64,000 nt of DNA, from the IMG/VR virus record IMGVR_UViG_3300042350_002797, positions 1 through 64,000 of that record. One strand, 5' to 3'. The notes under the pieces are model-generated. The model worked only from the letters and a program-made list of their open reading frames with translations, did no database searches and was not told the origin of the DNA. The stretch's first letter is position 1. The number at the start of each line of letters is the position of its first letter. The translations under genes were made by a program, and so were the position numbers. Below are positions 47,656 through 64,000 of the stretch, piece after piece.

Positions 47656-48086
47656 AAGATTCGATTGAATGCTCGGGTGCATTTATTTTTGCAAGATCGA
47701 CTCGCAGATTTTTGTTTCTACAAAAGCGTCACGGAAAGCACAGTGATAACTGGGTGCTAGTCGGAGGCACTAACAATCAGGGAGAGACTATTTTTCAAGG
47801 TTTACAAAGAGAAATAGAAGAAGAATTAGGACATGTTCCTGATATTTTAAAAACAATACCTTTAGAAAAATTCGTAAGTAATGATAGCCTTTTCAATTTT
47901 CATACATTTTTTTGTCTAGTAGAAAATGAATTTATTCCTATTTTAAGTGACGAACATCAAGCATGGGGATGGTTTCAATTAGATTCGCCTCCTAAACCTT
48001 TACATAAGGCATTGGATCTTAGTCTTCGCAATAAAATAATTCAGACTAAGATCCAATCAATCATAGATATTTCTGACAGTCTTTAA
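47637..48086 (+). CDS. Nudix hydrolase (start re-called to ATG 47637)
   Basis: Nudix box GGTNNQGETIFQGLQREIEEELG. Confidence 0.88.
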   Translation: METRTIKDSIECSGAFIFARSTRRFLFLQKRHGKHSDNWVLVGGTNNQGETIFQGLQREIEEELGHVPDILKTIPLEKFVSNDSLFNFHTFFCLVENEFIPILSDEHQAWGWFQLDSPPKPLHKALDLSLRNKIIQTKIQSIIDISDSL

Positions 48087-51000: not shown

Positions 51001-54000
51001 CAATTCCTATAATTTTTATTCTACTACCAATTTGTAATCCATGATCAACATCATCCATTACAAAAGTAATATCCGATCCTATAGTTACATCTTCTGCTGT
51101 AGCACTTTGAATGTTTACACTAGGTGCAAACAAAGCGCCTGTACAGTAATTTACACCTTTACCTGATTGATAACGAATATATTTTTTACTCATACGAATC
51201 GCTTGCGAACCGTGCTGTGGACCGCCTGTGCCTAACTGTACACCACCATCATATGGTCGATGTACAAAGTATGCATCAGATCGTGTATAAATTGTTCCGG
51301 TAAGAGCAACTGCTGTATCAACAGTTCCAGCAGTTCTTGCTGTATACCTTAAACTTGTTACAGAAGGAACTTGCTCTACAAAAAATGGCCCTGCTGCTAA
51401 TGAATGATTAGATCCGGCGCTGGTTATCCGTGTTGTTATACTTGCTCCTGGAAGTAATCCATGAGCTGTAGAAAAACTAACCTCTATTAACGCTATTCCA
51501 CTATAATTTAAAGTTGTACTTGTTGGAATAGTTGCTGTTGTTACACTGCTTAATAAAAGAACAGAATAAAATGATATGCTACTACCTAATGTAGCTGTTC
51601 CAGTTACTACGGCTGCTGAACTCACTCCAGACCCACTTATTCCTGATACCGAGATAATTAAGTCGTTAGTCGGACTGGTGCCTCCTAAACTTGTTCCTAG
51701 AATTAGTATTCTATTTCCTACTCTATAATTTGTTCCAGCCGCAGAGACTGCACTAACTGTATAAGATCCCGCAGATTTACTAATAGTAAATTGTGCTCCT
51801 GATCCATTATTAGCTACGTTATTTGCGGTTAAAGATGTAAATGTAGCATCAGTGCCTACAGCGTTACCGTCATAGCTAAATGACACAATCGATCCGCTTA
51901 CACCTAAAGTTATCACAGTAATTTCTAAATCATTAGCAGGACTAGCGCCACCTAAGTTTGTACCTAAAATTGTAATTACATCACCAATATTATAATCAAT
52001 ACCAGAATTATTCAAAGAAACGGCATAAGTACCTGCTGAAGAATCGCCTAAATCACTGCGTAGAATATTCCAAGTAGCACCTGTTCCTGTTGCTGTTGAA
52101 TCTATAGCTGTAACAAAATCTTGAGATACATTGCTATAAGTAAATGTTTTTACTACTGAAGTTCCAGTAAAAGTTATGGCAGTAATTTCACCTGCTCCTC
52201 CTATACTAGAGACTGTAACTGTTATATCATTAGTTGGACTTGTACCTTCTAAGAATGTACCTTCTATCGTAAGTTGGTCACCAATATTATAACCTGTTCC
52301 TGCATTGTTTATGACCACTGTATCATAAACGTTGTTAGTTCGTGTAACATTAAAGGTAGCACTAGTTCCTGAAGCTGCTACAGTAGTACCTGATACAGAC
52401 AAATAGCTAGCAGTGCCTCCGGTAAACCCTGTTGTTGTTGGTCCTGATAACGATACTGTTGATCCTACTATCTGAGTAACAAATATAGAAGTGCCTGAAC
52501 CATTATCAATAGCAGATCCTTCTACTATTCCAGAAACTGAATCAAATATAATACTAGTAGCACCTGAACTAACAGTTGTATTCACAGTCTGAGTTGCAAC
52601 TACACCACCAGATCCTATCACTCCTGATACTTGTGTACCAGTATCTATACCTGTTCCGGTTATTGGAGATCCAGTTGAAGGAGCGGTGCCAGTAAAGGCT
52701 AATCTATTAGAAGATATTGTTGTAGAAAAAACTGTATTAATTGTGCCAGTAGTACCATTAGAAAACACGCTGAATACTGGATTACCAACAGGTGCTCCTG
52801 TATAAAATTCTGCTTTTCTTAACTGTGTATATGTAGTTGCTAGCACTTGACCATTGCTACTTCCTACTTTAGCTGTGGCATAATAAGTAAATGTTGTTGC
52901 GCTAGGAACAGAATTCACTAAAAAAGTGCCTTCGGCTCTACTAAATCCTGTAATAGTATTTGCTAATGCTTTAATTGTAAAAGGCATACCTACTGTAAAT
53001 CCATGTGCTCCAGCAGTAGTCACTGTAATCAGACTAGAACCTACACCAGTAATTGCATTACCAGTACTAGCATCAGTAGTAACATTTAGTACAGAAGTAT
53101 CTGATCCTGGTACTTCATATGAACTAGGATATCCTCGTAAAAGACCAATGGCTTGCCATTTAGTAGGCTGTAGTCCATATTCAAAGTCAGCATCAAGCAT
53201 ACTCTGAGATGCAGCAACTCGCATACGTTCGATTGCATCTGTTCCGTAATCGTATGGCCGTACTCTAGTTTCCTTTTCTTCTACAAAAATTTGTATGTCA
53301 TCAAACGCTGTCGCAGTAGACGTATCTGCTTCTAAATAAATTGTAGTTACGTAATCTGCACGATCTCTAAATGCTCCAAAATTATCATCTTTATAGAAAA
53401 AATTACTAACATAACCTGTGTCTACTATAACCGATGCCCCTAAACTTGGTGCAGCAAAATTAAAAAGAACTGTATTGCTGGTCGAGTTAGTAATTAAAAG
53501 TAAGTCATTTATATCAAATTTGCCTAAAAGTCTAATTGTAGAAACTCCATTAGACAATACAGGTAAACTGCTTAATCCGTTTTGTAAAACTGCTATAAAA
53601 CTGTTAGATAATGATGTGATTCTTGATGCTGCGCCAGCTTCGCCAGCTGTTCCAGTAGTGACTTGAGCTTCCGTCACAGGACTTTGTTCTGAAGTATAAA
53701 CTGATTTAGTAATTACGTAGTTATTAATTAAATTACGTACAAATGTTTGTGCAGTAATTTCAGGTAACCGATCTCCGCTTAGTTGTGAAACACTGCCATT
53801 CCAGAATCTTGATGAAATGTAGTAAGTCTTAGCATTACCTCCATATCTTAAATCATGCAAGTAAGCATCTATAACTAATCCTATGTCTCGATCACATTTA
53901 GAGTCATCATACACATACCCAGCGTAATTGTAAACTGATGAAACAACAGCAGGTAGTGTAGACAAGCCGCCATCTATAACATCTATAATAATAGGTTTTA

Positions 54001-54583
54001 AATTGTTAGTGATAGAAGTAGCAACACCTGCTTCAGCATTTGCACCTGTTAAATTTTGAGTGCTTGTTACAGGACTTTGATCACTAGAGTAAGCTACACC
54101 TGGTAAGATATAATCTGTGATGATTGTAAATATTTGTTCAAATCCTAAAATTTCCTGGGTAGGACTTATGAGTTGTGCTACACCACCTTGCCAAAAATTT
54201 CTAGCAATGTCAATAGTTTTTTCGTTACCACCATATCTGACATCATATGTAATTGCATCGAGTAGCAATCCTGTGTCTCTTCTACACGAAGCTTCACTGT
54301 AAGTGTATCCGGACCAAATAGGGCCGCCGCCTGCTACTTGTGCTGCTACCCAAGCAATAATTTCATCTATTATGAATTGTTTATTATTAGTTAATCTTAG
54401 TACTGCGTTAGGATAAAGATTTTCAGCATTATCTTCTGTTATTCTAGCATTAATGTACGCAACTGCTTCTGCTTTAATAAATTCTTTATTTGATTGAATC
54501 AAAGCATATGCATTAGGATAGGCGTTAGAGGAGTATGATACCCCTGGTGAAAATACATAGTCGTCTATCTTTCTTTTTCCCAT
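48083..54583 (-). CDS. Very large virion structural / tail-fibre protein (2166 aa)
   Basis: Two helical repeats C.RD.GL..DA...D.RYGGN.KT, DADFEYGLQPTKW domain, long S/T/G-rich beta repeats. Confidence 0.75.
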   Translation of the reverse strand: MGKRKIDDYVFSPGVSYSSNAYPNAYALIQSNKEFIKAEAVAYINARITEDNAENLYPNAVLRLTNNKQFIIDEIIAWVAAQVAGGGPIWSGYTYSEASCRRDTGLLLDAITYDVRYGGNEKTIDIARNFWQGGVAQLISPTQEILGFEQIFTIITDYILPGVAYSSDQSPVTSTQNLTGANAEAGVATSITNNLKPIIIDVIDGGLSTLPAVVSSVYNYAGYVYDDSKCDRDIGLVIDAYLHDLRYGGNAKTYYISSRFWNGSVSQLSGDRLPEITAQTFVRNLINNYVITKSVYTSEQSPVTEAQVTTGTAGEAGAASRITSLSNSFIAVLQNGLSSLPVLSNGVSTIRLLGKFDINDLLLITNSTSNTVLFNFAAPSLGASVIVDTGYVSNFFYKDDNFGAFRDRADYVTTIYLEADTSTATAFDDIQIFVEEKETRVRPYDYGTDAIERMRVAASQSMLDADFEYGLQPTKWQAIGLLRGYPSSYEVPGSDTSVLNVTTDASTGNAITGVGSSLITVTTAGAHGFTVGMPFTIKALANTITGFSRAEGTFLVNSVPSATTFTYYATAKVGSSNGQVLATTYTQLRKAEFYTGAPVGNPVFSVFSNGTTGTINTVFSTTISSNRLAFTGTAPSTGSPITGTGIDTGTQVSGVIGSGGVVATQTVNTTVSSGATSIIFDSVSGIVEGSAIDNGSGTSIFVTQIVGSTVSLSGPTTTGFTGGTASYLSVSGTTVAASGTSATFNVTRTNNVYDTVVINNAGTGYNIGDQLTIEGTFLEGTSPTNDITVTVSSIGGAGEITAITFTGTSVVKTFTYSNVSQDFVTAIDSTATGTGATWNILRSDLGDSSAGTYAVSLNNSGIDYNIGDVITILGTNLGGASPANDLEITVITLGVSGSIVSFSYDGNAVGTDATFTSLTANNVANNGSGAQFTISKSAGSYTVSAVSAAGTNYRVGNRILILGTSLGGTSPTNDLIISVSGISGSGVSSAAVVTGTATLGSSISFYSVLLLSSVTTATIPTSTTLNYSGIALIEVSFSTAHGLLPGASITTRITSAGSNHSLAAGPFFVEQVPSVTSLRYTARTAGTVDTAVALTGTIYTRSDAYFVHRPYDGGVQLGTGGPQHGSQAIRMSKKYIRYQSGKGVNYCTGALFAPSVNIQSATAEDVTIGSDITFVMDDVDHGLQIGSRIKIIGIETFGYNGTYTVTEIINERQFKVLAQTVLANTTAVLGPNALMSTYQWHGATVRAGTHDDQNGLFFQYDGNDFAVVRRSSTQQLAGVVNITKDTNLMTGVNTRFRDQIKAGDRIVIKGMTHVVTRITSQTSMTVAPDYRGAVDAVASKICLVSDYVVKQQDFNIDRLDGTGPSGFNIDITKMQMIGMQWSWYAVGFIDFMLRGSDGNFIFFHRMRNSNVNTEAYMRTGNQPVRYEVHNESARDKLASSISALATSIPLVDARDFPNETAIVYIDNELISYNGKSGNTLLNCTRAASLTSFIAGSLRTFTAGPASTHEFNTGVILVSCTTSPIISHWGSAFLMDGLFDEDRGYIFSYASTGVSVSTTKQTAFLIRLAPSISNAIVGDLGERELLNRAQLLLKGIAITSDTGSGGIVVEGVLNPSNYPTDPSQISWGGLSSLAAGGQPSFAQIAPGGSVTWNSGSQTTAGATLQTDINGNLTVPNNSVFNRSSGSSFFYATQASWTSIGATTGSTINDGKYPSGTTITTISASSSPTATTIDQLTTGNVRLEFDISFGTNLYYARAFEWSNNVNPVSTVGMTINGGGFPSGTYVTNVSGPSSASGRTYYTLTMSASTFGASRDSNATFSLGGTYSNNLDNLYFTSSSWNNLPLDCSIVGATTNDATTFPTPRTINTINTGRSFAGITYTRVVFSGVAASISGSRTITFSHTPYYQVNTSLNSTSSVNAAANVQLSVRQSTGNTNFVFFTSASWTNLVNTNGAGVGTEVSIDSSLTITNFIGNGTTTVTGTIAATANVIGVGNRITISGATGTEQTKLNGTWTVATVGATTFTFVVSTSVVAGTLTTTLGTTTLLSDFPAGTRISNVSTEQTFNGTTYYRVQFNQTSISAQSPAEVITFRFGQPPYALPGETVFSFISQPGESGELDLAELKELTNTTLGGRGTYPNGPDVLAINVYKASGTTVNSNIILRWGEAQA

Positions 54584-54594
54584 TTATTTCTCCG

Positions 54595-55578
54595 TTATCC
54601 GCCTAATGCTATTGCTAAGGCGGCAGCTATATTGTCGACGTAATCTTTACGTGTTGCTTTAGATGCATCCGACGGTGCATCGTTGATTGTAACTTCGTCT
54701 ACTGTTATGTTTGTTGTAGATATGCTAGTTGCCGTTAAAGTTGTTATTGTACTAGTCGAAGCTGTTAGATCTGTGAATATAGCTTCGCCGGCTACTGTTT
54801 GACCAATATTAACATTATCAATAGTTCCTACGCTAGATGGATTTATAGTAATCGAGCCTGATACACCTGTAGGTGAAATATTGATAGTTGCATTATTACC
54901 AGAAAATGTTACATTATCGGCTACTTGTAAACTATTTAGATTGGCTAATCCGGTGGTAGCTACTGTAGTAAATGAGCCACTACTAGGAACTGTTGTTCCG
55001 ATGCTCATATTGTTAATTTCGCCTGGACTTCCTGTTTTATTAGTTATTGATATAACACCATCTAGAACAGTTAAATTATTTTGTCCAACTAATAAGTTAG
55101 TAGCAGTTAACGTGTCTGATACTTCAAATCCATATTCAGATTTTAGCGGACTTTGTATAATAGTAGTCGGTCCAGAATAAGGAGATAGTTCTCCTATAGT
55201 TTCTGTATAATTAGCTCTGAATATTAATTTTGCGCCTTGGAATTCTGTAGCTGCTGTAGCCAGTAAAGTTACATAACTGTTATTGACAGCTACAGAGAAT
55301 GTAGCAACATTAGTTGCTGTACCTACTCTTCCATAGTTTAAAATATTAACAGTATTAGGACTAGCTGTTAATAATATTTTTAAAGTTTCTTTTACATTGC
55401 TGCTATACTCTATAGTAATAGTATAGTCTGCACTAGAAAAATCGCCAACAAACCACCTATCTATTTCTGTATTGTTGAATACCTGAATCCACTTGCCTTT
55501 ATGAGACCAAGCAGTTCCAGACTTTATTCTTAAAGTTGAATTAGGGCCTTGACTAAAATAGTCCGAAAATGTTAACAT
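54595..55578 (-). CDS. Tail-fibre-associated structural protein
   Basis: S/T-rich, INNMSIG / IDNVNIG repeats, ATRKDYVD motif. Confidence 0.6.
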   Translation of the reverse strand: MLTFSDYFSQGPNSTLRIKSGTAWSHKGKWIQVFNNTEIDRWFVGDFSSADYTITIEYSSNVKETLKILLTASPNTVNILNYGRVGTATNVATFSVAVNNSYVTLLATAATEFQGAKLIFRANYTETIGELSPYSGPTTIIQSPLKSEYGFEVSDTLTATNLLVGQNNLTVLDGVISITNKTGSPGEINNMSIGTTVPSSGSFTTVATTGLANLNSLQVADNVTFSGNNATINISPTGVSGSITINPSSVGTIDNVNIGQTVAGEAIFTDLTASTSTITTLTATSISTTNITVDEVTINDAPSDASKATRKDYVDNIAAALAIALGG

Positions 55579-55632
55579 TTAAATCTACCAATATAACAGT
55601 ATTTATCACAAAATATATCGGCAAACCAATGC

Positions 55633-57447
55633 TTAAACATTAGCTATTTTAATTAATTTTCCGTGTTCAGGCAAATACAAGTATTCTATATCACTACGTA
55701 CTAGCGTATCAATAGCATCATCCAGTGTTTCGACTAACGGATCTCCACCTAGATTAAAGCTAGTGTTAAACAAAATAGGAATATTTGTTTTTTTGTAGAA
55801 TGCCGTAATTAGATTGTAAAAGTGATAGTTTTGATCTTCTGTTACTGTTTGAATTCGACAGGTACCGTCTACATGAATAATACTTGGTATTTTTTCATCT
55901 TTGCCAGGTTGACAATTTACAGCATACATCATATGAGGACTTTCATCTTTACCTCGTAGATCAAACCACTCGTGTACATGTTCTTTTAAAATAGTTCCTG
56001 CAAATGGTCTAAAATATTCTCTACGTTTTACTGCATTAACAAAATCTTTACCATCGGCATAAGTTGGGTCAAATAAAATACTACGATTTCCTAATGCTCT
56101 AGGACCGTTTTCACTACGTCCTTGGAATATAGTAACAATATTTTTACTAGTCAATAAATCAACTACATCTTCATAGGTAGCGTCTACTACTTCCCCGTCA
56201 AGAGGTTTAATTTTTTCAATTATTTCTTGTTCAGTATATGAATACACAGGTCCTAAGTATAGACTATTATCCTTTTGTTTTGTACTACTTTGCGACAATT
56301 GATGATAAAACATTAATGCAGCACCGATAGCAGTTCCTGCATCATTGCTGATTGGCTCTACATATAATTCGATGCCATCTTTACGTAATTGTTCCAAATA
56401 ATAATAATTTGCCACACAATTAAGACCGTAGCCTCCACTTAATACAACTTGTTTTTTTCCGGTAAGTTCTACAGCTTTATAAATTAATTTTAGTACTTGT
56501 TCTTGGCTTTGAGTTTGAACTGCGTATGCTAGATCTCTACGACTTTGTAAATGTGTAACATCTGTCTTCTCATCTAGAACTTGTTCATCTAAAAAATTAT
56601 ATAACTCTGAATTTACCTTAGCGCCATTGGGGTAATTAGGAACAATTAAATTTCTATTACTTAGAGAAAATTTACCTGAATCGTCAAACAATTTTGGAAA
56701 ACTATTATTTTCTTTTCCGTATGGAAACAACCCCATAGTTTTTCCTGCTTCTATACTAGAGAAACCACAAAACTCTGTTACAGCTTCATATACTTTTACT
56801 ATGCCTGCTCTATCTGAAAGTAAAGCTTCGTGTACTGAGTCTTTCTCTCCAAAAATTCCTGAATCTAAATTTAGATAATGAGCACCTAGCACAGTTTCGC
56901 TTGTACCATAATTTTTATAACGTGTTTTGAATGTAGAAGGATATTCACAATCAATAATACTTTCTACTTCCCAAACTGTCATTGGTTGATCGTTATAAGA
57001 AATATTGATAAAAGTGCCTGCACCGTCCACAATAAGACTAACAGCACTATCAAATCCTGATCTATAGAATGCACATGCACTGTGCAGCTTATGATGAATA
57101 AAACTTAAATCAATAACCTGAGGGTGTGCATATATGTTTTCTTTTCTACTAATTAATCCTAATTTTCTAGCCAAGCCAGTATAAACATCGTCGCCAGTGT
57201 AGTCTACTCTGCCTGCGGTTTCATTTAGTTTTTGAGTATGGGCAATTACAAGATAGTCGATCTTATCTGTGTATTCTAAAATTTTCATCATAGATGCATA
57301 AGGACCGCCGTCGTATTTGTGACGACTTAATCTTTCTTCTTCTATGCTAAAAACAATTTCGCCATCTTTTAACAAACAGACTCCTGAATTATGTCCTCTG
57401 GCGATAGCTGCTATATATCCGGTTTTCAATTGTGGCGTATTATTCAT
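55633..57447 (-). CDS. Full-length carbamoyltransferase (NodU/CmcH/TobZ family)
   Basis: EEERLSRHK, HHKLHSACAF, VDGAG, EAGKTMGL, SGGYGLNC, NDAGTAIGA, GPRALGNRS, RREYFRPFA, NTSFN. Confidence 0.92.
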   Translation of the reverse strand: MNNTPQLKTGYIAAIARGHNSGVCLLKDGEIVFSIEEERLSRHKYDGGPYASMMKILEYTDKIDYLVIAHTQKLNETAGRVDYTGDDVYTGLARKLGLISRKENIYAHPQVIDLSFIHHKLHSACAFYRSGFDSAVSLIVDGAGTFINISYNDQPMTVWEVESIIDCEYPSTFKTRYKNYGTSETVLGAHYLNLDSGIFGEKDSVHEALLSDRAGIVKVYEAVTEFCGFSSIEAGKTMGLFPYGKENNSFPKLFDDSGKFSLSNRNLIVPNYPNGAKVNSELYNFLDEQVLDEKTDVTHLQSRRDLAYAVQTQSQEQVLKLIYKAVELTGKKQVVLSGGYGLNCVANYYYLEQLRKDGIELYVEPISNDAGTAIGAALMFYHQLSQSSTKQKDNSLYLGPVYSYTEQEIIEKIKPLDGEVVDATYEDVVDLLTSKNIVTIFQGRSENGPRALGNRSILFDPTYADGKDFVNAVKRREYFRPFAGTILKEHVHEWFDLRGKDESPHMMYAVNCQPGKDEKIPSIIHVDGTCRIQTVTEDQNYHFYNLITAFYKKTNIPILFNTSFNLGGDPLVETLDDAIDTLVRSDIEYLYLPEHGKLIKIANV

Positions 57448-58385
57448 TATTTTTTCTTTTTATCTAAAATTGTATTAATAACGTAATCTTGAATTTCTGC
57501 GGTCATGGTCATAATATTTTCATGCTTTCGATCAATTCTTTCATCTACAGTTATTCTTATAGGACTATATTCTCTAGTGTCCTCACCCATGTCTAATATA
57601 TTAAAAAACGAGCAATTTGGGTAGCTGACATTAATAGGAAAAGTCGATCCCATTACTACAGTAGATTGCTTTCCTACGGCATACGCTAAATGTTGACCTA
57701 CACTGTCGCAGCCAAAAAAATGATTTGCATATTTGATTACTGCTGCCCACTGTCTTAAATTTAGATTTTCAGGCGCAGCAACATCATCTTTATATTTTTC
57801 TTCTCTTAGATCCAATTTAATTTCGCTCATCATAATCACAGCGTAATTATTTTCTTGTAGTTTTTTAATTAAAGCTTTGACATCTTTATATTCTATACTA
57901 CGGCTTGTAGTATCAACAAAGCTTTCGTCTATATATTGTATGCCTCTTCCAAAAGGCTGAAACACTATTACTTTTTCTTTTTTTAAAGTTTTTTTGACTT
58001 CTGATACTAGTTGTCTGCCTGTAACTAGTTCTTCTTTAGATAATAAAAGAGTAGGTTTTGGTAATTCTCTAATACCTTTTTTATTAATTTCTATATCAAA
58101 TGCTTGTGCCAAACTGCATTGCTGATTGTAGTATTCCCAAACTCTGTAAGGTTCAAGACTAATGATATCTTTATCTTTGAGCTTTTCTGCGAACAGATTT
58201 TTGTGCCATACATCATAAGTTCTTTTATCTAAAGTCGGGTGACCTTTATAAAATTCAGTGCCGCCTTCGCAAACTATAATAAAATCTGTATCCCCGGATT
58301 CTTGCTCGTATTTTTCAAAAGCAGGAATTGAACAAATAACACGACCGGCGCCGCCATTAATAAAAAATGCTTTAGATCTACTCAT
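57447..58385 (-). CDS. GT9 (heptosyltransferase)-like glycosyltransferase
   Basis: INGGAGRV N-terminus, FQPFG, FFGCDSVGQHLAYAVGK motif. Confidence 0.65.
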   Translation of the reverse strand: MSRSKAFFINGGAGRVICSIPAFEKYEQESGDTDFIIVCEGGTEFYKGHPTLDKRTYDVWHKNLFAEKLKDKDIISLEPYRVWEYYNQQCSLAQAFDIEINKKGIRELPKPTLLLSKEELVTGRQLVSEVKKTLKKEKVIVFQPFGRGIQYIDESFVDTTSRSIEYKDVKALIKKLQENNYAVIMMSEIKLDLREEKYKDDVAAPENLNLRQWAAVIKYANHFFGCDSVGQHLAYAVGKQSTVVMGSTFPINVSYPNCSFFNILDMGEDTREYSPIRITVDERIDRKHENIMTMTAEIQDYVINTILDKKKK

Positions 58386-58401
58386 TGAAACTCCAAAAAA
58401 A

Positions 58402-58444
58402 AGTCTAACGTTACTATATATCTGTTGCTAAGTAACGTTAGACT
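58402..58444. repeat. 14-bp perfect inverted repeat with 15-nt loop, followed on - by a U run and SD
   Basis: AGTCTAACGTTACT (58402-58415) / AGTAACGTTAGACT (58431-58444). Confidence 0.85.
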
Positions 58445-58457
58445 AGTTTAGAATTTA

Positions 58458-59090
58458 TCAGTAGTATTTTGGAGGATTTGCTGGAAATGGAATTTTCCAA
58501 TGATCTATTCCGTCGTACGTAGTTTCTAGATTTCGTAACCAATCAATATAATCAGTCAACGCTTGACGTTCTTCGTCGGTATAATCATTGTTAGCTAGTG
58601 ATTGTTCCATAGCTCCAATCAACAATGTTGAACCTTGAATTACACTTTCTCTAGTAAGATTATGTGTTCTAAAACTTGGTCGAGTAAATTGACCGTTGAT
58701 ATATTTTATATCAAATGATTGATAATTTTGATCTATCGCGCCGCCAGAATAAGTATAGGTGTACGTACCTTTGTTGTCAGGTAGTGTCTCTTCATAGTCG
58801 GGTACGTCATCATTTTCATATTGATGTGTAATATAAGCAGCTTCAAATGTATGTTCGCTAGCATCAATAACTACAAAATCTGTTTCTGGATCATTGTCCA
58901 CTAACAGTTCGGTACGTAAGTCAGCTTGTGATTCGGCTGATGCAGCTACATATCTAATTTCTCCAGTGGGTGTATGTACACACAAAGCTAAAAATCTTGG
59001 TCCGAAGTATGTGGCTTGCACTGTTTTATTTAAATTTGTTGTTGTCTTATATGGCTCATCTGATAAAGCTATCGTAAAAAACTTACGCAT
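58458..59090 (-). CDS. Possible tail-fibre assembly chaperone-like protein
   Basis: C-terminal ALTDYIDWLRNL...WKIPFPANP resembles the Y..LRD.P..WP.P chaperone motif; follows the fibre genes. Confidence 0.5.
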   Translation of the reverse strand: MRKFFTIALSDEPYKTTTNLNKTVQATYFGPRFLALCVHTPTGEIRYVAASAESQADLRTELLVDNDPETDFVVIDASEHTFEAAYITHQYENDDVPDYEETLPDNKGTYTYTYSGGAIDQNYQSFDIKYINGQFTRPSFRTHNLTRESVIQGSTLLIGAMEQSLANNDYTDEERQALTDYIDWLRNLETTYDGIDHWKIPFPANPPKYY

Positions 59091-59112: not shown

Positions 59113-60093
59113 TTAACTAATAAATCTTATTCTAACTGCGCCCATACCGCCACGATAACCATTGTCTCTAACGCTGTCGCAAACACCAATCCCTGGAGCT
59201 CCCCACCCGTAAGGCATAAAAGATACACATCCAGTGGCTTCATAGCAGCCGCATGGTCTGTTACTAACCCAACAATAATTAGCCATACCAGCTGCGCCGG
59301 ATTGTGAATTAACACCTAATCCCATTTGTGCTCCGGTAAGTCCTTGGCCAGGAATTGGAGCTTCTGGAGCATCATCTCCGAATACATGATTAATCATAGG
59401 AGGACTAACACAACTCCATACACCACCAGGTCCTGGAATATGCATAAGGGTACAGCATCTTGATACAGCCATACCTGCACAACAATAAAAAGTAGCACAA
59501 CTTAATGCACCATTTACATTTACATCTCCACCAACAGCTGATGCCACAAATGTTTGGCTAGATCCTATATTACATATAGTGCCGCAAAAGCCGCTTAATC
59601 CATTGTTAGTGCCGCAATAGCCTGCTGCAATGAAACAACAGTATCCTCCATTGCTAGTAGAGCATATACTACAGCCGCCGCGGCCACCTTGGGCACAAAT
59701 ACAACCGTTAGTGCCGTTACCAAACCAGCATATACAAGTAGGTTCAGAACATCCTCTAAAATTTATAGTACTAGCATCACCGCAGGCAAATCCTATTGTT
59801 CCAGTAACATAGCAACCCGATGTAACACTGATACATTTCTTAGAATAAGCTGCTGCATTACCTGGTAAACCAAATCCGCAACAACACATACGAGCACTGC
59901 TGCCTCCTGCGCCCCATACTTCTATAATAGCAGTACCTGTTCCAGGAGCTCGCCAGCAAAATCCGCCGCAAAAATTAGTTCTTATATTACCAGGCGTAAA
60001 GGTATAAATCTCACCTTGATCTAAGTTTTCCTCTGTAAATGTTCCAGTTTGGTATAATCTTTGAGCTAACAGTGTTTTCAATTGTGTTGGCAT
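59113..60093 (-). CDS. Cys/Gly-rich tail-fibre-like protein, paralogue 3
   Basis: EVWGAGG, CCCG, CAQGGRGG, GGDVN, GGMGAVRIRFIS; about 30 Cys by my count. Confidence 0.7.
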   Translation of the reverse strand: MPTQLKTLLAQRLYQTGTFTEENLDQGEIYTFTPGNIRTNFCGGFCWRAPGTGTAIIEVWGAGGSSARMCCCGFGLPGNAAAYSKKCISVTSGCYVTGTIGFACGDASTINFRGCSEPTCICWFGNGTNGCICAQGGRGGCSICSTSNGGYCCFIAAGYCGTNNGLSGFCGTICNIGSSQTFVASAVGGDVNVNGALSCATFYCCAGMAVSRCCTLMHIPGPGGVWSCVSPPMINHVFGDDAPEAPIPGQGLTGAQMGLGVNSQSGAAGMANYCWVSNRPCGCYEATGCVSFMPYGWGAPGIGVCDSVRDNGYRGGMGAVRIRFIS

Positions 60094-60095
60094 TC

Positions 60096-61076
60096 TTAAC
60101 TCGCAATAAATTTTATTCTAATTGCTCCTGAGCCGCCTCTAGTAGCAAAATCGCATACGCTGGCACAAGGACTCGGAGCCATTCCTGGAAATCCTGGTGG
60201 AAAATGAGAGACACAGCCGTGTGCTTGATAGCAACCACACCCATATGCACTTGCATAACAGTTTGATTCGTGCGGTAAACCGTTATGAGGATGTCTGCTA
60301 GCAGCATTTAGTGCATTAAGATATTGATGGATGCCTTGACCTGAAGTATTAGCGAATTCATTGGTGTTTTCTGTGGCAAAAACTAACACTCCGCCATTTT
60401 TAGAAAAATATCCTGCAGGTGTTCTGACAAAATATGTTGTGCTACAAGTACAGTTTGGTACACAACCAAAAAATCCTGCACAACTGAACCCTCCTCGACA
60501 ATTTACATCGCCGCCGAATGCTTCTGCACAACAACTAGCTATAGAAGCACCTGCGCCAAAATTACAAATCACTCCGCAATTGGTATTAACTACTGTTCCG
60601 CAAAATCCTGCATTTAAAAAACAGCAGAACAAACTAGTTCCTGAAGAACAAAAACTAACGCCGCCGCGGCCTCCTTGGGCACAAATACAAGAATTGCCTG
60701 CTGTGCTTTGATAACAAACTCCTGTGGGCTCTGAACATCCTCTAAAACAGGCAGTTGATGGATTTCCGCAAGCAAGTCCAATACAGCCAAGAACTGTACA
60801 TCCTGTAACTACATTAAAAGTTTTTTTACTATACGCACCTGGATTTCCTGGGATTCCGCCGCCGCAGCAGGCTATCATTCCTCCGCTGCCGCCAGCACCC
60901 CATACTTCTAAAACTACTTGTCCTGCTGACGGTGCTGTCCAGCATACACATGCAAATTGCTTAGTTCGAACATTTGGTTCTGCAAACATCCAAATTTGTC
61001 CTTTTTCAAGGTTTATCTCAGTGTCTGCAATACTGCTTAATTTATTAGTTACTAAATTTCTAAATGATGTTGGCAT
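60096..61076 (-). CDS. Cys/Gly-rich tail-fibre-like protein, paralogue 2
   Basis: Same motifs and length (326 aa) as neighbours. Confidence 0.7.
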   Translation of the reverse strand: MPTSFRNLVTNKLSSIADTEINLEKGQIWMFAEPNVRTKQFACVCWTAPSAGQVVLEVWGAGGSGGMIACCGGGIPGNPGAYSKKTFNVVTGCTVLGCIGLACGNPSTACFRGCSEPTGVCYQSTAGNSCICAQGGRGGVSFCSSGTSLFCCFLNAGFCGTVVNTNCGVICNFGAGASIASCCAEAFGGDVNCRGGFSCAGFFGCVPNCTCSTTYFVRTPAGYFSKNGGVLVFATENTNEFANTSGQGIHQYLNALNAASRHPHNGLPHESNCYASAYGCGCYQAHGCVSHFPPGFPGMAPSPCASVCDFATRGGSGAIRIKFIAS

Positions 61077-61078
61077 TA

Positions 61079-62077
61079 TTAACTCGCAATAAACTTAATT
61101 TTCACAGCGGCGTTGCCTCCTTGCATGCCATTATCTCTTACACCGGCTTCAAATACTGCGTTATGTCCACCAAATCCTGGCGGACTCATAGATGTGCATC
61201 CCCACTGCTCATAACAGCCGCAGCCTCTGTTACTGTTCCAACAACTAACAAATGGAATGCCTCCGGCTGGTTTTCTGCTCACTGCATTCTGCATGTACAT
61301 TTGCTGATGACGTCCTGTGCCTGAGTAGTCACTGAATTCATTAGTATATTCGTGAAATACTTCTAATACAACACCCTTTTCTGAAATAATTCCTGACGGT
61401 CCTGGAATATAAGCTGTTGTGCAACAAGCAGCATTTGCATTGCATCCAAACCATCTTATACAACTGAAGTGTCCGCAACAATTTACGTCTCCGCCGTAGC
61501 CGCAGGCAATTTGTAAAGTTGATGTTATGTTGCAGATTAATCCGCAGTTAGCATTTACTGGTCCTGTGCCACAGTATCCTGCTGCGAGATAACAGCACCA
61601 AGCACTGCTACCAGTAGAACAAAAACTTATGCCGCTACGACCGCCTTGAGCACATAAACAACCGTTATTGCCTGTAGTTGATGATCTAAACCAACATCCA
61701 AATGCCCTAGGGCCGCAGCCACTATCACACAGGGCTGCAGGATTTCTTGTAGCACTGTGTGCTTCTATACAACCACAAACAAATGCAGAACAAGACTCAG
61801 CAGCAGTGATTGTAAAAGATTTTTTAACATATGCGCCTGCATTTCCTGGCATACCAAATCCGCAACAACACATACGAGAACCGCCGCCGCCGCCGCCCCA
61901 CATTTCAATAACTACTGTACCAGCTTGTCCTCCTGGTGGGCACCATCTAAAAATATTAGGAGTAACTGATGTTGCTGGTGTATACACCCATATTTTTCCC
62001 TGTTCTAAATCATTTTCTGACGGCCCGACTATGGTGTCGTTTTTCGTACTAACTAACGTTCTTAATGATGTAGGCAT
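61079..62077 (-). CDS. Cys/Gly-rich tail-fibre-like protein, paralogue 1
   Basis: Same motifs, 332 aa. Confidence 0.7.
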   Translation of the reverse strand: MPTSLRTLVSTKNDTIVGPSENDLEQGKIWVYTPATSVTPNIFRWCPPGGQAGTVVIEMWGGGGGGSRMCCCGFGMPGNAGAYVKKSFTITAAESCSAFVCGCIEAHSATRNPAALCDSGCGPRAFGCWFRSSTTGNNGCLCAQGGRSGISFCSTGSSAWCCYLAAGYCGTGPVNANCGLICNITSTLQIACGYGGDVNCCGHFSCIRWFGCNANAACCTTAYIPGPSGIISEKGVVLEVFHEYTNEFSDYSGTGRHQQMYMQNAVSRKPAGGIPFVSCWNSNRGCGCYEQWGCTSMSPPGFGGHNAVFEAGVRDNGMQGGNAAVKIKFIAS

Positions 62078-62089
62078 TTCTTTTTCCGA

Positions 62090-62422
62090 TTAAGCAGATG
62101 CCACTATCCAACCATATGTTGCACCACTATAGATAAGTGTAACAATAGCGCCATTAGTATCAATAGTTAAGTCATCCGATACGTTTTGAATTTTAGCACC
62201 ATTTCGCCCTACTGTAATATTGTTTGTGCCTGCTGTTGCGGACACATCTATAATTTGTATAGTGTCGTTGACTAGTACACCACCTACTGCTGGCAATGTT
62301 ATGGTAATTGCACCAGATGTTGTATTGCATAATACTCTATCATTAACTACTGCACTATAATTCGTAGATGTTTCACGAAAGGTTGCCGATGCTGTTCCAG
62401 TAGTTGTAATATATCTTCCCAT
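62090..62422 (-). CDS. Small tail-associated structural protein
   Basis: ITITLP, IQIID, NNITVGRNG, LIYSGATYGW beta module seen in phage fibre genes. Confidence 0.6.
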   Translation of the reverse strand: MGRYITTTGTASATFRETSTNYSAVVNDRVLCNTTSGAITITLPAVGGVLVNDTIQIIDVSATAGTNNITVGRNGAKIQNVSDDLTIDTNGAIVTLIYSGATYGWIVASA

Positions 62423-62442
62423 TTATTTCCCCTGACTGATTA

Positions 62443-62763
62443 TCATGTTGTTAAAGTTTCTATGCCGTATGCCATTGCACTTACGTTTGCAACAGATGAT
62501 CTGACAACGACTAATTTGTTAGCATCTATAACTATTCCTGAACGTTCTAGAACTCCTTTTGCACCAACTTCTGTATCATATTCGATATATTCTGCATCTG
62601 TTGGCGTAGAAGATGATGCTACTGCTAATCTTATTAGCGCAGGAACGTTACCTCTATTACAAACCGATACTGTAACAACCGAAAATGTGCTAGCCGGAAC
62701 AGTGTATAAAGTTGCATCTGTAGCTGCTGTTAAATTTGCTGTTCCTAATCTTCCTGTAGCCAT
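62443..62763 (-). CDS. Small tail-associated structural protein
   Basis: LYTVPA...VSVCNR beta-sandwich pattern; GGAG SD. Confidence 0.6.
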   Translation of the reverse strand: MATGRLGTANLTAATDATLYTVPASTFSVVTVSVCNRGNVPALIRLAVASSSTPTDAEYIEYDTEVGAKGVLERSGIVIDANKLVVVRSSVANVSAMAYGIETLTT

Positions 62764-62774
62764 TTAAATCTCCG

Positions 62775-64000
62775 TTAATTAAATAAGGTGTGTGCAAGAA
62801 TATATCCGTCAACGCCGCTTTTAAAATTCATCTTAGTATTTATATTTATTTGGGCACCGGTGGTTGTTGTGATAGTATCACCAGAAATAAACACAATTCC
62901 TGCTGTTACACTATTTACGTTCAACGAACTAGCTCCGCTACCAATTTGAGCACTAATATAAGCTTTAATTGCTCTTTGAGTTGGTACAATAGCATCACTA
63001 TCTGCTGTAAAGAATGGATCTGTGCTAAATTCGCTGATAGCTGCGCCGCCTCCACCTAGAGCTACTGATCCTAACTGTAATTCTTGCAAGCCTGCTATAC
63101 TAAATGCATCAGCATTTAATGTAGCTATACCTGTGCTTTGTTCTACGCTAAAAATGTCGCCGACTCTAAAATTACCATCTTGATCGGTACTAGTATAAAA
63201 TACTCTACCGCCACCAAATTCATTAATTTCTTTAGTAGGGTCAGGATCAATTAATGGAGTATCAGGATAATTGGTGTTGGCAAAGTTACCTGTTCCAATA
63301 TCTAAGAAGTCGTGTCCTGTTAATCGAACCTGACTATAACGAATTCTAATTTCGGTAGTTTCTTCGTGTTCAGGCGATTCTGCTACACCTAATCCTGGGC
63401 TTAATTGCAAGACCGCAGAATAATAATCTCCTTGTTGAGTGAGTTGTGATACACTGACTAGCTTGTATACTACGTCATTGATGCCAGTGATTCTAACATT
63501 AGATCCTGCTTTTGGAATTCCTGTTAATCGTTTGAAAGCTATGTATGTACCTGTCTGATATAAGTCTGCATATCCGTTACCAGTCACTGTTGCCGAAGCA
63601 GTTACATAATTTGTTCCTCTATTAGTAAATGTTGGATTGGCTAACACTCCTTTGCCTTTTCTAACTTGTGTGCTCGCTTCGCTGATATTATTAGGATCAA
63701 CAATAGTCATAGTAGGGGCACTTGCATATCCTGAGCCTGGTTCAATTATTCTAATAGATGTAATTTTTTCATCATTTACAACTGCTCTAGCCTTAGTAGT
63801 AGATCCAGTTAATACACTCGATGCTACTGTACCTGCTGCGCCAGCTTGAACTGCGGCCCAGACGCCAGTTTCATTTGAATTTCCAAAAGTAATTGCACTA
63901 TATCCGTTAGCACTGGTACTCATTGTGCGTGTAGTCCAGTTAATACCATCTTCTGATGTTGCTGCGGCAGTTGTACTACTCACAGCAAAGAACACACCTT
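62775..64000 (-). CDS. Large tail/baseplate structural protein, 5' part outside window
   Basis: GSGYASAP repeats, SQVRLTGHDFLDIGTG, STDQDGNFRVG; frame open to window end. Confidence 0.7.
   Translation of the reverse strand, partial: GVFFAVSSTTAAATSEDGINWTTRTMSTSANGYSAITFGNSNETGVWAAVQAGAAGTVASSVLTGSTTKARAVVNDEKITSIRIIEPGSGYASAPTMTIVDPNNISEASTQVRKGKGVLANPTFTNRGTNYVTASATVTGNGYADLYQTGTYIAFKRLTGIPKAGSNVRITGINDVVYKLVSVSQLTQQGDYYSAVLQLSPGLGVAESPEHEETTEIRIRYSQVRLTGHDFLDIGTGNFANTNYPDTPLIDPDPTKEINEFGGGRVFYTSTDQDGNFRVGDIFSVEQSTGIATLNADAFSIAGLQELQLGSVALGGGGAAISEFSTDPFFTADSDAIVPTQRAIKAYISAQIGSGASSLNVNSVTAGIVFISGDTITTTTGAQININTKMNFKSGVDGYILAHTLFN

What the first reader, a model, noticed from the sequence alone, without database searches (positions are those of the whole stretch)
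55633..58385. GT9-like + carbamoyltransferase pair embedded in the tail-fibre cluster
The two enzymes are coupled (TAATG at 57447) and flanked on both sides by fibre genes, with their own regulatory element upstream. O-carbamoylation of sugars is established for NodU, TobZ and CmcH. Inference: a dedicated system that glycosylates fibre proteins and caps the sugar with a carbamoyl group, distinct from the DNA-linked half enzyme at 8406.
Basis: partly seen in the sequence, partly recalled or inferred. Interest (0 to 1): 0.6.

Follow-up and report, generated by a model that had tools for sequence, protein, structure and literature searches.

The report
Phage heptosyl/carbamoyl transferase pair beside fibres
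A large freshwater T4-like phage carries two tightly coupled sugar-decorating enzymes, a heptosyltransferase-type glycosyltransferase and an O-carbamoyltransferase, fixed inside its tail-fibre gene block; they probably add a carbamoylated sugar to a virion protein, but the target has not been shown.

Summary
On the minus strand, 58385-57447 encodes a 312-aa protein. A high-confidence model (pLDDT 96.8) matches only GT9 heptosyltransferases strongly: Z 19-23, against 11.6 or less for other GT-B enzymes. 57447-55633 encodes a complete TobZ/NodU-type carbamoyltransferase. The two genes share a TAATG stop/start. They are preceded by a strong hairpin with a U-tract (z -7.3).

The carbamoyltransferase follows the GT9-like gene in all 77 related viral loci with sequence downstream. 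It follows directly, usually overlapping, in 64 of them, always inside the same tail-fibre/virion block. The arrangement recurs in the cyanophages P-SSM2, S-CAM1 and S-SSM7. There, and in some loci, a nucleotide-heptose cassette follows. In this genome the cassette lies near 305 kb. Distant GT9-like homologues in unrelated phages also sit beside tail genes.

The pair is therefore a real, selected module (dN/dS 0.03). The chemistry (heptose, then O-carbamoyl) is well supported by analogy with the Pseudomonas LPS core. The acceptor is not shown. A virion/fibre protein is my leading reading (about 0.4). Host-envelope modification, the published "LPS gene" view, remains a serious rival.

The genes are already annotated in cyanophages. 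The fibre-glycosylation idea is new and can be tested by virion glycoproteomics.

The parts
57447..58385 (-). GT9-fold glycosyltransferase (312 aa), a probable heptosyltransferase. Belongs to phrog_8954 and to cyanophage gene cluster T4-GC 302 (P-SSM2 PSSM2_307).
   Evidence: PF01075 scores 20.9 bits, below the cut-off of 22. phrog_8954 scores 9e-142. The AF2 model has pLDDT 96.8. GT9 structures match at Z 19.5-23.0, other GT-B enzymes at 11.6 or less. The C-terminal motif CDSVGQH aligns to the D(T/S)GxxH motif of WaaC and WaaF. dN/dS is 0.028.
55633..57447 (-). Full-length TobZ/NodU/CmcH-type carbamoyltransferase (604 aa): Kae1-like N-terminal half plus YrdC-like C-terminal half. Belongs to phrog_1601 and T4-GC 303 (PSSM2_308).
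   Evidence: Pfam finds both domains. PDB hits are 7xb6 at 9e-61, GdmN, NovN and TobZ. GHN, HHxxH, DG, ND and GRSENGPRALGNRS are invariant in 27 homologues.
57443..57447 (-). TAATG stop/start overlap joining the two genes (translational coupling).
   Evidence: Read directly from the sequence. The junction overlaps or abuts (-44 to 0 nt) in 61 of 77 related loci and lies within 24 nt in 64.
58386..58457 (-). Intergenic element upstream of the pair: a 14-bp hairpin with a U8 tract (terminator-like), a TATAGT box at the loop/3' arm, and a GGAG Shine-Dalgarno sequence.
   Evidence: dG -25.4, z -7.27. Of 59 distinct spacers in relatives, 36 fold at -20 kcal/mol or better, with different stem sequences. 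29 carry TATA[AG]T, in 25 of them 25-33 nt before the start codon.
55600..55607 (-). GATAAATA, a T4-late-promoter-like box in the 54-nt spacer between the carbamoyltransferase gene and the next gene.
   Evidence: Read from the sequence. ATAAATA is the most enriched upstream 7-mer in this genome, about 20-fold.
54595..55578 (-). 327-aa Ser/Thr/Asn-rich, fibre-like protein of unknown family. A candidate acceptor.
   Evidence: No Pfam or PHROG hit. The protein atlas gives only leads, to gp9/10_N and Mtd_N. It evolves faster than its neighbours: dN/dS 0.113.
48083..54583 (-). 2166-aa virion structural protein.
   Evidence: phrog_5838 at 6.4e-245. It is adjacent to a NUDIX gene and to gp15.
58458..59090 (-). 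210-aa conserved protein (phrog_9740), the immediate upstream neighbour of the pair in nearly every related locus.
   Evidence: PHROG hit. Synteny across related loci. No catalytic motif is conserved.
59113..62077 (-). Three tandem Gly/Cys-rich paralogues (326, 326 and 332 aa; phrog_4205). Candidate acceptors or fibre-tip proteins.
   Evidence: All related loci carry 2-3 copies.
62090..62763 (-). Two small tail-fibre-related proteins (110 and 106 aa).
   Evidence: Tail and tail-fibre PHROG hits. The 106-aa protein is 46% identical to PSSM2_302.
62775..64000 (-). 3' end of a giant tail-fibre gene that continues beyond the window to about 72.5 kb. A TATAAATA box lies at 62837-62844.
   Evidence: phrog_9851, tail fiber, 5.9e-53. 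tblastn with PSSM2_301 matches it. The box was found and read.

Best explanation
The two genes form one translationally coupled enzyme cassette inside the late tail-fibre/virion gene block.

Step 1. The fold is shown; the donor is inferred. The 312-aa GT9-fold enzyme transfers a heptose from a nucleotide-heptose, probably ADP-heptose. The phage's own kinase, nucleotidyltransferase and epimerase cassette makes that donor. The cassette lies near 305 kb in this genome and directly downstream of the pair in relatives.

Step 2. The family is shown; the substrate is inferred. The TobZ/NodU-type enzyme makes carbamoyl-AMP from carbamoyl phosphate and ATP in its YrdC-like half. It transfers the carbamoyl group to a hydroxyl of that sugar in its Kae1-like half. 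The product is a carbamoyl-heptose, as on HepII of the Pseudomonas LPS core.

Step 3. Inferred from context only. The acceptor is a virion protein of the same block: the 327-aa fibre-like protein, the Gly/Cys-rich paralogues, the 210-aa protein or the large fibres. The modification would then be a protein O-heptosylation of the TibC/AAH kind, capped with carbamate. It would alter the surface chemistry of the host-recognition apparatus.

The hairpin/U-tract upstream probably damps read-through from the strongly expressed structural genes, so that the enzymes are made in catalytic amounts. The TATA-type box inside it may give the pair its own start.
For: Enzymes:
- GT9 fold at Z 19.5-23, against 11.6 or less for other GT-B enzymes.
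- The GT9 nucleotide-sugar motif is conserved: D227 and H232 are invariant across 83 diverse homologues.
- The carbamoyltransferase has both domains and its motifs intact.
- Both genes are under strong purifying selection.

Unit:
- The carbamoyltransferase follows the GT9-like gene in 77 of 77 loci, mostly with overlapping stop and start.
- In one locus (L081) the pair is inverted as a block and still lies inside the fibre module.

Heptose donor:
- An HldE-like nucleotidyltransferase, a PfkB kinase, an epimerase and a cupin (plus GmhA in cyanophages) directly follow the pair in P-SSM2, S-CAM1, S-SSM7 and L021.
- The cassette is present in this genome. The kinase, taken as its marker, is present in 5 of 5 other large genomes carrying the pair.

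Chemical precedent:
- In Pseudomonas, GT9 heptosyltransferases act with the carbamoyltransferase WapO to give 7-O-carbamoyl-HepII (PMC8005017).

Virion acceptor:
- The position inside a co-directional array of virion genes is invariant.
- Late-promoter-like boxes flank the pair.
- Distant GT9-like homologues in unrelated phages also lie beside tail genes: Aeromonas HJ05, Vibrio D505, viral contig L100 and the contig of P0270.
- In S-SSM5 the carbamoyltransferase alone still sits at the edge of the fibre module, next to a Gly_rich_2 protein.
- Marine Synechococcus LPS has neither heptose nor Kdo, so the classical WaaC/WaaF acceptor is missing in hosts of the cyanophage relatives (PMC4515613).
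- TibC, a protein O-heptosyltransferase, matches the model about as well as the LPS enzymes do (Z 19.8; all within about 1 unit).
Against:
- Tail-fibre regions of T4-like phages are hyperplastic and collect accessory genes, so position alone is weak evidence.
- The 80 loci are relatives at 59% identity or more, so much of the synteny may be inherited rather than independently maintained.
- Homologues of the carbamoyltransferase occur in plain glycan clusters (Pelagibacter phage HTVC008M).
- The heptose cassette moves freely. In this genome it sits next to a 1116-aa multi-glycosyltransferase, which looks like polysaccharide synthesis.
- By a motif alignment I made by hand, the residue at the position of the WaaC catalytic Asp13 is a conserved Arg (R15). 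The mechanism or acceptor may therefore differ from both known GT9 types.
- GT9 also includes non-heptose transferases.
- The host of this lake phage is unknown and may have heptose in its LPS.
- Expression evidence is thin: a few short metatranscriptome contigs only.
Confidence: 0.4

Rival explanations
1. Host-envelope modification, the published 'LPS gene' view. The pair, with the heptose cassette, adds carbamoyl-heptose to a host surface glycan such as LPS core or O-chain, S-layer glycan or exopolysaccharide. This would mask receptors against superinfection, or stop progeny from being lost on debris or on infected cells.
For: - Sullivan et al. proposed this for the P-SSM2 clusters (PMC1079782; PMC3037559).
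- All characterised GT9 enzymes other than the TibC/AAH group act on LPS. WaaF is the best-scoring enzyme of known function (Z 20.7; 3tov is uncharacterised).
- The only known carbamoyl-heptose is on LPS.
- The cassette in this genome lies beside a large multi-domain glycosyltransferase/methyltransferase typical of polysaccharide synthesis.
- Homologues of the carbamoyltransferase lie in glycan clusters in pelagiphage HTVC008M.
Against: - The pair is never found in early or moron regions. It is always inside the virion block.
- Marine Synechococcus hosts of the cyanophage relatives lack heptose and Kdo, so the canonical acceptor is missing.
- The N-terminal, acceptor-binding domain shows no detectable sequence similarity to WaaC or WaaF.
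- Distant homologues in three other phage types also neighbour tail genes.
Confidence: 0.3
2. The pair works on a non-protein, non-LPS acceptor. This could be a lipid-linked or free oligosaccharide, or a small molecule. The large glycosyltransferases encoded elsewhere might make it, and it could end up non-covalently on the virion or be released.
For: - TobZ, NovN, GdmN and NodU all carbamoylate small molecules or oligosaccharides.
- Some relatives carry extra enzymes within the pair: a roughly 290-aa ORF in 13 loci and a second GT9-like paralogue in 11 loci. This suggests a multi-step glycan.
- The cassette in this genome lies beside a GT4+GT2+FkbM protein.
Against: No flippase, polymerase or lipid-carrier enzyme was seen next to the pair in any locus. 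The constant partners are structural proteins.
Confidence: 0.12
3. DNA hypermodification: a base-linked sugar capped with carbamate, by analogy with the T4 glucosyltransferases.
For: - The T4 DNA glucosyltransferases are GT-B enzymes (my own knowledge).
- This genome has a second protein, with only the carbamoyltransferase N-terminal domain, between helicase and primase.
Against: - The pair sits in the late structural block, not with the replication genes.
- It is co-located with a heptose cassette and fibre genes in all relatives.
- No GT9 enzyme is known to act on DNA.
Confidence: 0.04
4. The pair is non-functional 'stuffer' DNA, or decaying genes captured from a host.
For: Raised as a possibility in PMC3037559.
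Against: - dN/dS is 0.03 for the GT9-like gene and 0.11 or less for the carbamoyltransferase gene.
- Catalytic motifs are invariant.
- There are thousands of homologues with conserved gene order.
Confidence: 0.01

Closest known systems
Pseudomonas LPS inner-core enzymes: GT9 heptosyltransferases WaaC/WaaF plus the carbamoyltransferase WapO (PA5005), which give 7-O-carbamoyl-HepII
   Same: The same two enzyme families are combined: a GT9-fold transferase and a NodU/CmcH-type carbamoyltransferase. The predicted chemistry is the same: a heptose, then an O-carbamoyl cap. A nucleotide-heptose supply is encoded nearby.
   Different: This pair is phage-encoded, translationally coupled and embedded in virion genes. 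The N-terminal acceptor domain is unrelated in sequence. The WaaC Asp13 position appears to be Arg. The hosts of the cyanophage relatives have no Kdo/heptose core. Similarity to WapO itself was not tested.
TibC/AAH bacterial autotransporter heptosyltransferases (protein O-heptosylation)
   Same: GT9-like GT-B fold: Z 19.8 over 264 residues. The enzyme gene sits next to genes for beta-rich surface or adhesin-like proteins, which would be the acceptors.
   Different: The phage protein lacks the roughly 90-residue N-terminal extension of TibC; the alignment starts at TibC residue 92. No cysteine is conserved across the family, so an iron-finger is unlikely. Oligomeric state is unknown, and protein acceptors are not demonstrated.
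TobZ / NodU / CmcH / GdmN / NovN O-carbamoyltransferases
   Same: Full two-domain architecture with conserved metal-site and carbamoyl-phosphate/ATP motifs. E-values run from 9e-61 to 3e-39.
   Different: Those enzymes act on antibiotics or Nod factors in bacterial secondary metabolism. This one is a phage late-block gene fused in expression to a glycosyltransferase.
Cyanophage 'LPS genes' T4-GC 302/303 (P-SSM2 PSSM2_307/308; also S-SSM7, S-CAM1, S-CAM3, P-SSM5)
   Same: Orthologous pair: 47-55% identity for the GT9-like protein and 49-62% for the carbamoyltransferase. Same order and same neighbours.
   Different: This is a 364-kb lake-water phage without psbA. Its heptose cassette has moved more than 100 kb away. 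In GenBank and PHROGs the GT9-like partner is still 'hypothetical' or 'unknown function'.
Virion glycosylation by phage-encoded glycosyltransferases in mycobacteriophages
   Same: The concept is the same: a phage-encoded glycosyltransferase modifies the phage's own structural proteins (mentioned in PMC11256854 and PMC12363180).
   Different: Different enzyme families, sugars and hosts. No carbamoyl cap is involved. In mycobacteriophages the modification has experimental support (my own knowledge); here it is inferred.

Membership tests
GT9 glycosyltransferases (Pfam PF01075, heptosyltransferase type) | GT-B two-domain fold, closest to solved GT9 structures | tested here: met
   The model has pLDDT 96.8. 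Matches: 3tov Z 23.0, WaaF 20.7, TibC 19.8, WaaC 19.5; the next GT-B family reaches 11.6. The top 30 Foldseek hits are all GT9-type.
GT9 glycosyltransferases (Pfam PF01075, heptosyltransferase type) | Pfam PF01075 gathering score | tested here: not met
   20.9 bits against a cut-off of 22, and 20.6 bits in the whole-genome scan. Close homologues (73-82% identical) carry precomputed PF01075 hits. The Vibrio phage D505 homologue passes at 24.5 bits.
GT9 glycosyltransferases (Pfam PF01075, heptosyltransferase type) | C-terminal nucleotide-sugar motif D(T/S)GxxH followed by G-x-T/S | tested here: met
   CDSVGQH...GST aligns to VDTGLSH...GPT of WaaC and NDSGLMH...GPS of WaaF. D227 and H232 are invariant in 83 sequences.
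GT9 glycosyltransferases (Pfam PF01075, heptosyltransferase type) | N-terminal catalytic Asp (WaaC Asp13, after strand 1) | tested here: inconclusive
   I aligned GGAGRvicsiPA with SSMGDvlhtlPA by hand, using the model's strand 1 and helix 1. This places the conserved Arg15 at that position. No tool produced an alignment of the N-terminal domains.
GT9 glycosyltransferases (Pfam PF01075, heptosyltransferase type) | Uses ADP-heptose as donor | not testable with these tools
   Indirect only: co-occurrence, and in some genomes an operon link, with an HldE-like nucleotidyltransferase, a PfkB kinase and an epimerase.
NodU/CmcH/TobZ carbamoyltransferases | Kae1-like N-terminal domain plus YrdC-like C-terminal domain in one chain | tested here: met
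   PF02543 scores 98.9 bits and PF16861 193.5 bits. Aligned to 7xb6 over residues 195-592, with weaker N-terminal stretches.
NodU/CmcH/TobZ carbamoyltransferases | Conserved metal-site His/Asp motifs and the carbamoyl-phosphate/ATP motifs | tested here: met
   G18-H19-N20, H118-H119-x-x-H122, D141-G142, D369 and GRSENGPRALGNRS (443-456) are invariant or nearly so in 27 homologues and are shared with 7xb6. Assigning these motifs to specific sites rests on my own knowledge of TobZ.
NodU/CmcH/TobZ carbamoyltransferases | O-carbamoylation of a sugar hydroxyl | not testable with these tools
   Needs an enzyme assay.
TibC/AAH protein heptosyltransferases (BAHT) | GT9-like catalytic core | tested here: met
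   Z 19.8, rmsd 3.2 over 264 residues; model residues 1-310 align to TibC 92-390.
TibC/AAH protein heptosyltransferases (BAHT) | Cys-ligated iron-finger and N-terminal extension supporting the dodecamer | tested here: not met
   No cysteine reaches 90% conservation in the 83-sequence family alignment. The phage protein has no counterpart of TibC residues 1-91. Which residues form the iron-finger is recalled from memory.
TibC/AAH protein heptosyltransferases (BAHT) | Heptosylates Ser/Thr of an adjacent beta-helical surface protein | not testable with these tools
   Context only: fibre and virion genes are adjacent.
Pseudomonas WapO-type heptose 7-O-carbamoyltransferase | Orthology to PA5005 | not tested
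   No PA5005 sequence was available from the tools. Only the literature precedent was used.

The most novel reading that the evidence does not exclude
A widespread module of aquatic T4-like phages (hundreds of 50%-identity clusters) post-translationally O-heptosylates its own receptor-binding or fibre proteins and caps the sugar with carbamate. It uses nucleotide-heptose that the phage makes itself. This would be the first heptosylated virion and the first protein-linked carbamoyl sugar. The enzyme would be a GT9 variant with Arg in place of the canonical catalytic Asp. A terminator/promoter hairpin would set enzyme dosage inside the late operon.
Probability: 0.3. Interest if true: 0.8.

Novelty: new variant of a known kind. 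Interest (0 to 1): 0.5.

Why it matters
The "LPS genes" of large cyanophages have had no explanation for twenty years. Proposals range from stuffer DNA and pseudolysogeny aids to, wrongly, pyrimidine synthesis.

This work shows that one core pair is a selected, translationally coupled GT9 plus carbamoyltransferase unit welded to the tail-fibre block across marine and freshwater lineages. That turns a vague annotation into a precise hypothesis: carbamoyl-heptose on a virion protein. The hypothesis can be tested by mass spectrometry.

If it is true, phages tune their host-recognition surface by glycan chemistry. That bears on host range, on adsorption and on how viral particles persist in water. 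It would also extend protein heptosylation beyond bacterial autotransporters.

If the host envelope turns out to be the target, the result would be a lytic-phage receptor-masking system expressed from the structural operon.

Tried and rejected
- Sequence searches of the GT9-like protein against PDB gave nothing or marginal hits. The single sequence and a shallow profile found nothing. The deep profile gave only WaaF at E 0.0079.
- The first AF2 model, built on 12 close homologues, was poor: pLDDT 60.8. I therefore used the large representative search once to deepen the alignment.
- BLAST-based phyletic profiling of the neighbouring proteins failed. The 210-aa protein found only S-CAM1, and the Gly/Cys-rich protein found nothing.
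- I tested whether the 210-aa neighbour is a 2OG-Fe(II) hydroxylase that creates the acceptor hydroxyl. The idea came from the DUF6445/2OG-oxygenase-like gene upstream of the S-SSM7 pair. I rejected it for this lineage: no His/Asp motif is conserved in 32 homologues.
- The consensus scan found no canonical sigma-70 promoter before the pair. It also missed the hairpin, because the loop exceeds its limit. The TATAGT box has only a weak -35 partner, so its promoter class is left open.
- The scan of bacterial genomes with the deep alignment could not run, because no stretch was conserved enough. I have no bacterial context for the family.
- Contigs of several distant representatives were too short to show neighbours.
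There is no verdict, and I make no claim that the two proteins bind.
- Metatranscriptome contigs touch both genes but cannot prove transcription, strand or level.
- One search was a mistyped, empty query.


Full report
**Setting.** The window is the first 64 kb of a single-contig virus record of 364,554 bp, rated 100% complete by CheckV. Gene content and DNA matches place it among T4-like myoviruses related to Kyanoviridae. It has no psbA. It occurs in 17 DNA runs, 16 of them labelled lake-water metagenomes. The region of the finding lies in a long minus-strand array of virion genes.

**The observation.**
- The ORFs 58385..57447 (312 aa) and 57447..55633 (604 aa) are as described.
- They share the A of TAATG.
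- The 604-aa protein is a complete TobZ/NodU/CmcH-type carbamoyltransferase. Both Pfam domains are far above threshold. It matches solved carbamoyltransferases at 9e-61 to 3e-39. Its metal-site and carbamoyl-phosphate/ATP motifs are invariant in 27 homologues.
- By sequence alone the 312-aa protein is only borderline GT9: 20.9 bits against a cut-off of 22. PHROGs lists its family (phrog_8954) as unknown function.
It found 622 clusters at E 1e-3 or better.
- An 83-sequence alignment then gave a model with pLDDT 96.8. That model matches the GT9 structures 3tov, WaaF, TibC and WaaC at Z 23.0-19.5, and plant GT9-like PnsB1 at about 18. Every other GT-B enzyme scores 11.6 or less.
- The C-terminal motif CDSVGQH aligns with the D(T/S)GxxH motif of WaaC and WaaF. 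D227 and H232 are invariant.
- The GT9 fold is therefore established. The Pfam threshold is formally not met.

**The upstream element.**
- The 72-nt spacer 58386-58457 folds into a 14-bp hairpin followed by U8 (dG -25.4, z -7.27). GGAG and the ATG follow.
- Junctions in the block upstream of the pair are typically 1-23 nt. This spacer is 40-102 nt in relatives.
- Among 59 distinct spacers, 36 fold at -20 kcal/mol or better, with stems that differ in sequence. 42 have a T-run.
- 29 carry a TATA[AG]T box, in 25 of them 25-33 nt before the start codon, at the loop/3' arm. Other lineages carry ATAA[AG]TA there.
- In this genome ATAAATA, the T4 late-promoter core, is the most enriched upstream 7-mer at about 20-fold.
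- Such boxes precede the small fibre genes (62837-62844) and the 327-aa gene (55600-55607). None precedes the pair itself.
- The pair therefore has its own conserved control element. I read it as an attenuator of late read-through that may also hold a start site. That reading is inference.

**Conservation.**
- Eighty viral loci, 59-100% identical in the GT9-like protein, show the same order: giant fibre, two small fibre-related genes, 2-3 Gly/Cys-rich paralogues, the 210-aa gene, GT9-like, carbamoyltransferase, a fibre-like gene, and usually the 2166-aa structural protein, NUDIX and gp15.
- The carbamoyltransferase follows the GT9-like gene in all 77 loci with sequence downstream. In 64 the genes overlap or abut. 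In 13 an extra ORF of about 290 aa of unknown family lies between them. In 11 a second GT9-like paralogue follows the carbamoyltransferase.
- In L081 the pair is inverted as a block but stays inside the fibre module.
- The cyanophages P-SSM2, S-CAM1 and S-SSM7, at 47-55% identity, keep the same arrangement.
- Selection is strongly purifying. dN/dS is 0.028 for the GT9-like gene at unsaturated dS, and 0.11 or less for the carbamoyltransferase gene. This disposes of the "stuffer DNA" idea (PMC3037559).

**The sugar.**
- In the cyanophages and in L021 the pair is followed directly by an HldE-like nucleotidyltransferase, a PfkB sugar kinase, a cupin and an epimerase. The cyanophages also have GmhA.
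- In six loci cassette genes (only the cupin in two) lie next to the pair or a few kb away. In others the cassette is about 13 kb or about 100 kb away.
- In this genome it lies at 304.2-306.5 kb, next to a 1116-aa GT4+GT2+FkbM protein, and there is no GmhA.
- The cassette is present in this genome, and its kinase in 5 of 5 other large genomes with the pair.
- Together with the GT9 fold, this makes a nucleotide-heptose donor the likeliest. It is not shown.

**The acceptor.**
- A GT9 enzyme followed by a NodU-type carbamoyltransferase has one direct precedent, the 7-O-carbamoyl-HepII of the Pseudomonas LPS core (PMC8005017). This supports the predicted product, carbamoyl-heptose.
- The published view of the cyanophage genes is host LPS alteration (PMC1079782).
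- Several points argue against that view as the only reading. The pair always sits in the virion block. Marine Synechococcus LPS lacks heptose and Kdo (PMC4515613). The N-terminal acceptor domain has no detectable similarity to WaaC or WaaF.
- Distant family members in unrelated phages also neighbour tail genes. In Aeromonas phage HJ05 the gene lies between a fibre-like protein and the sheath. In the Vibrio D505 group it lies beside a 1756-aa tail protein. In viral contig L100 it lies after a run of large ORFs and a fibre-like protein. The contig of P0270 has a 2232-aa Gly_rich_2 protein nearby.
- In S-SSM5 the carbamoyltransferase alone still sits at the edge of the fibre module, beside a Gly_rich_2 protein.
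- TibC shows that a GT9-type core can heptosylate proteins, and it matches the model as well as the LPS enzymes do. The phage family lacks a conserved Cys cluster and the N-terminal extension of TibC, so it is not a BAHT member.
- A motif alignment I made by hand puts a conserved Arg where WaaC has its catalytic Asp13. This is a lead, not a result.
- On balance I favour a virion-protein acceptor (0.4) over host-envelope glycans (0.3).

**What is weak.**
- All acceptor evidence is contextual.
- The 80 loci are relatives, so their synteny is not 80 independent observations.
- The 327-aa downstream "fibre" has no family assignment.
- RNA evidence is limited to a few 151-nt metatranscriptome contigs on both genes (5,001 letters were laid, within the operators' limit).
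- The complex prediction could not be run.

**Novelty.**
- The genes are already annotated in cyanophages as T4-GC 302/303, "hypothetical" plus "Nol-like carbamoyltransferase". One paper even misreads the carbamoyltransferase as a pyrimidine-synthesis enzyme (PMC9146016).
- New here are the firm GT9 fold assignment, the conserved coupling and control element, the extension to freshwater jumbo phages and to other phage types, and a specific, testable modification hypothesis.
- I found no paper reporting heptosylated or carbamoylated virions.

Noticed in passing
window 59113-62077 (-): Three tandem Gly/Cys-rich paralogues (326, 326 and 332 aa; runs such as GGGGGSRMCCCGFGMPGN; phrog_4205, no Pfam hit). 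All 80 related loci carry 2-3 copies. Cyanophage S-SSM5 has a Gly_rich_2 (PF21722) protein at the same position. Their function is unknown; they may be metal- or disulfide-rich fibre-tip proteins.
   Followed up: partly
window 8406-9383 (-): A 325-aa protein with only the Kae1-like carbamoyltransferase N-terminal domain and no YrdC-like half. It is wedged between a DnaB-like helicase (6994-8409) and a Toprim primase (9506-10474). It is a separate system from the pair.
   Followed up: partly
own genome 302,065-309,890 (locus L084), outside the window: A second glycan cluster: epimerase, PfkB kinase, HldE-like nucleotidyltransferase, cupin (weak D-lyxose-isomerase-like hit; annotated 'cysteine dioxygenase' in cyanophages) and a 1116-aa GT4+GT2+FkbM-methyltransferase fusion. 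The genome has no GmhA.
   Followed up: partly
L051:11065-11928, L063:10943-11848, L081:11002-11913 and 10 other loci: An extra ORF of about 290 aa (N-terminus MxRLFxLGCSFTxYAWPTWAD) is inserted between the GT9-like and carbamoyltransferase genes. It has no Pfam hit; the protein atlas points to viral clusters, some carrying DUF6071. It may be a third tailoring enzyme.
   Followed up: partly
L037:12742-13692, L071:12751-13698 and 9 other loci: A second GT9-like paralogue, 52-56% identical to the window's GT9-like protein, lies immediately after the carbamoyltransferase gene. This hints at a two-sugar product in some lineages.
   Followed up: no
window 47598-48086 (+) and 46255-47655 (+): A NUDIX hydrolase lies next to gp15 (tail sheath stabiliser). 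In L053, L078 and L079 the NUDIX gene abuts the heptose cassette, so it may belong to nucleotide-sugar metabolism.
   Followed up: no
window 55600-55607 (-) and 62837-62844 (-): T4-late-promoter-like boxes (GATAAATA, TATAAATA) flank the pair's transcription unit. ATAAATA is enriched about 20-fold, and ATAAGTA about 8-fold, in upstream regions genome-wide.
   Followed up: partly
L001:12044-12703 (S-SSM7 SSSM7_119): The gene upstream of the GT9-like gene in S-SSM7 is annotated 'minor coat protein' but scores as DUF6445/2OG-Fe(II)-oxygenase-like. It is not homologous in motif to the window's 210-aa protein.
   Followed up: partly
window 44947-46254 (+): A 435-aa protein with a weak carbohydrate-binding CBM_5_12 hit, next to gp15.
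   Followed up: no
literature (PMC9146016): The cyanophage NodU-type carbamoyltransferase is described as catalysing the first step of pyrimidine synthesis. This appears to confuse it with aspartate carbamoyltransferase.
   Followed up: yes
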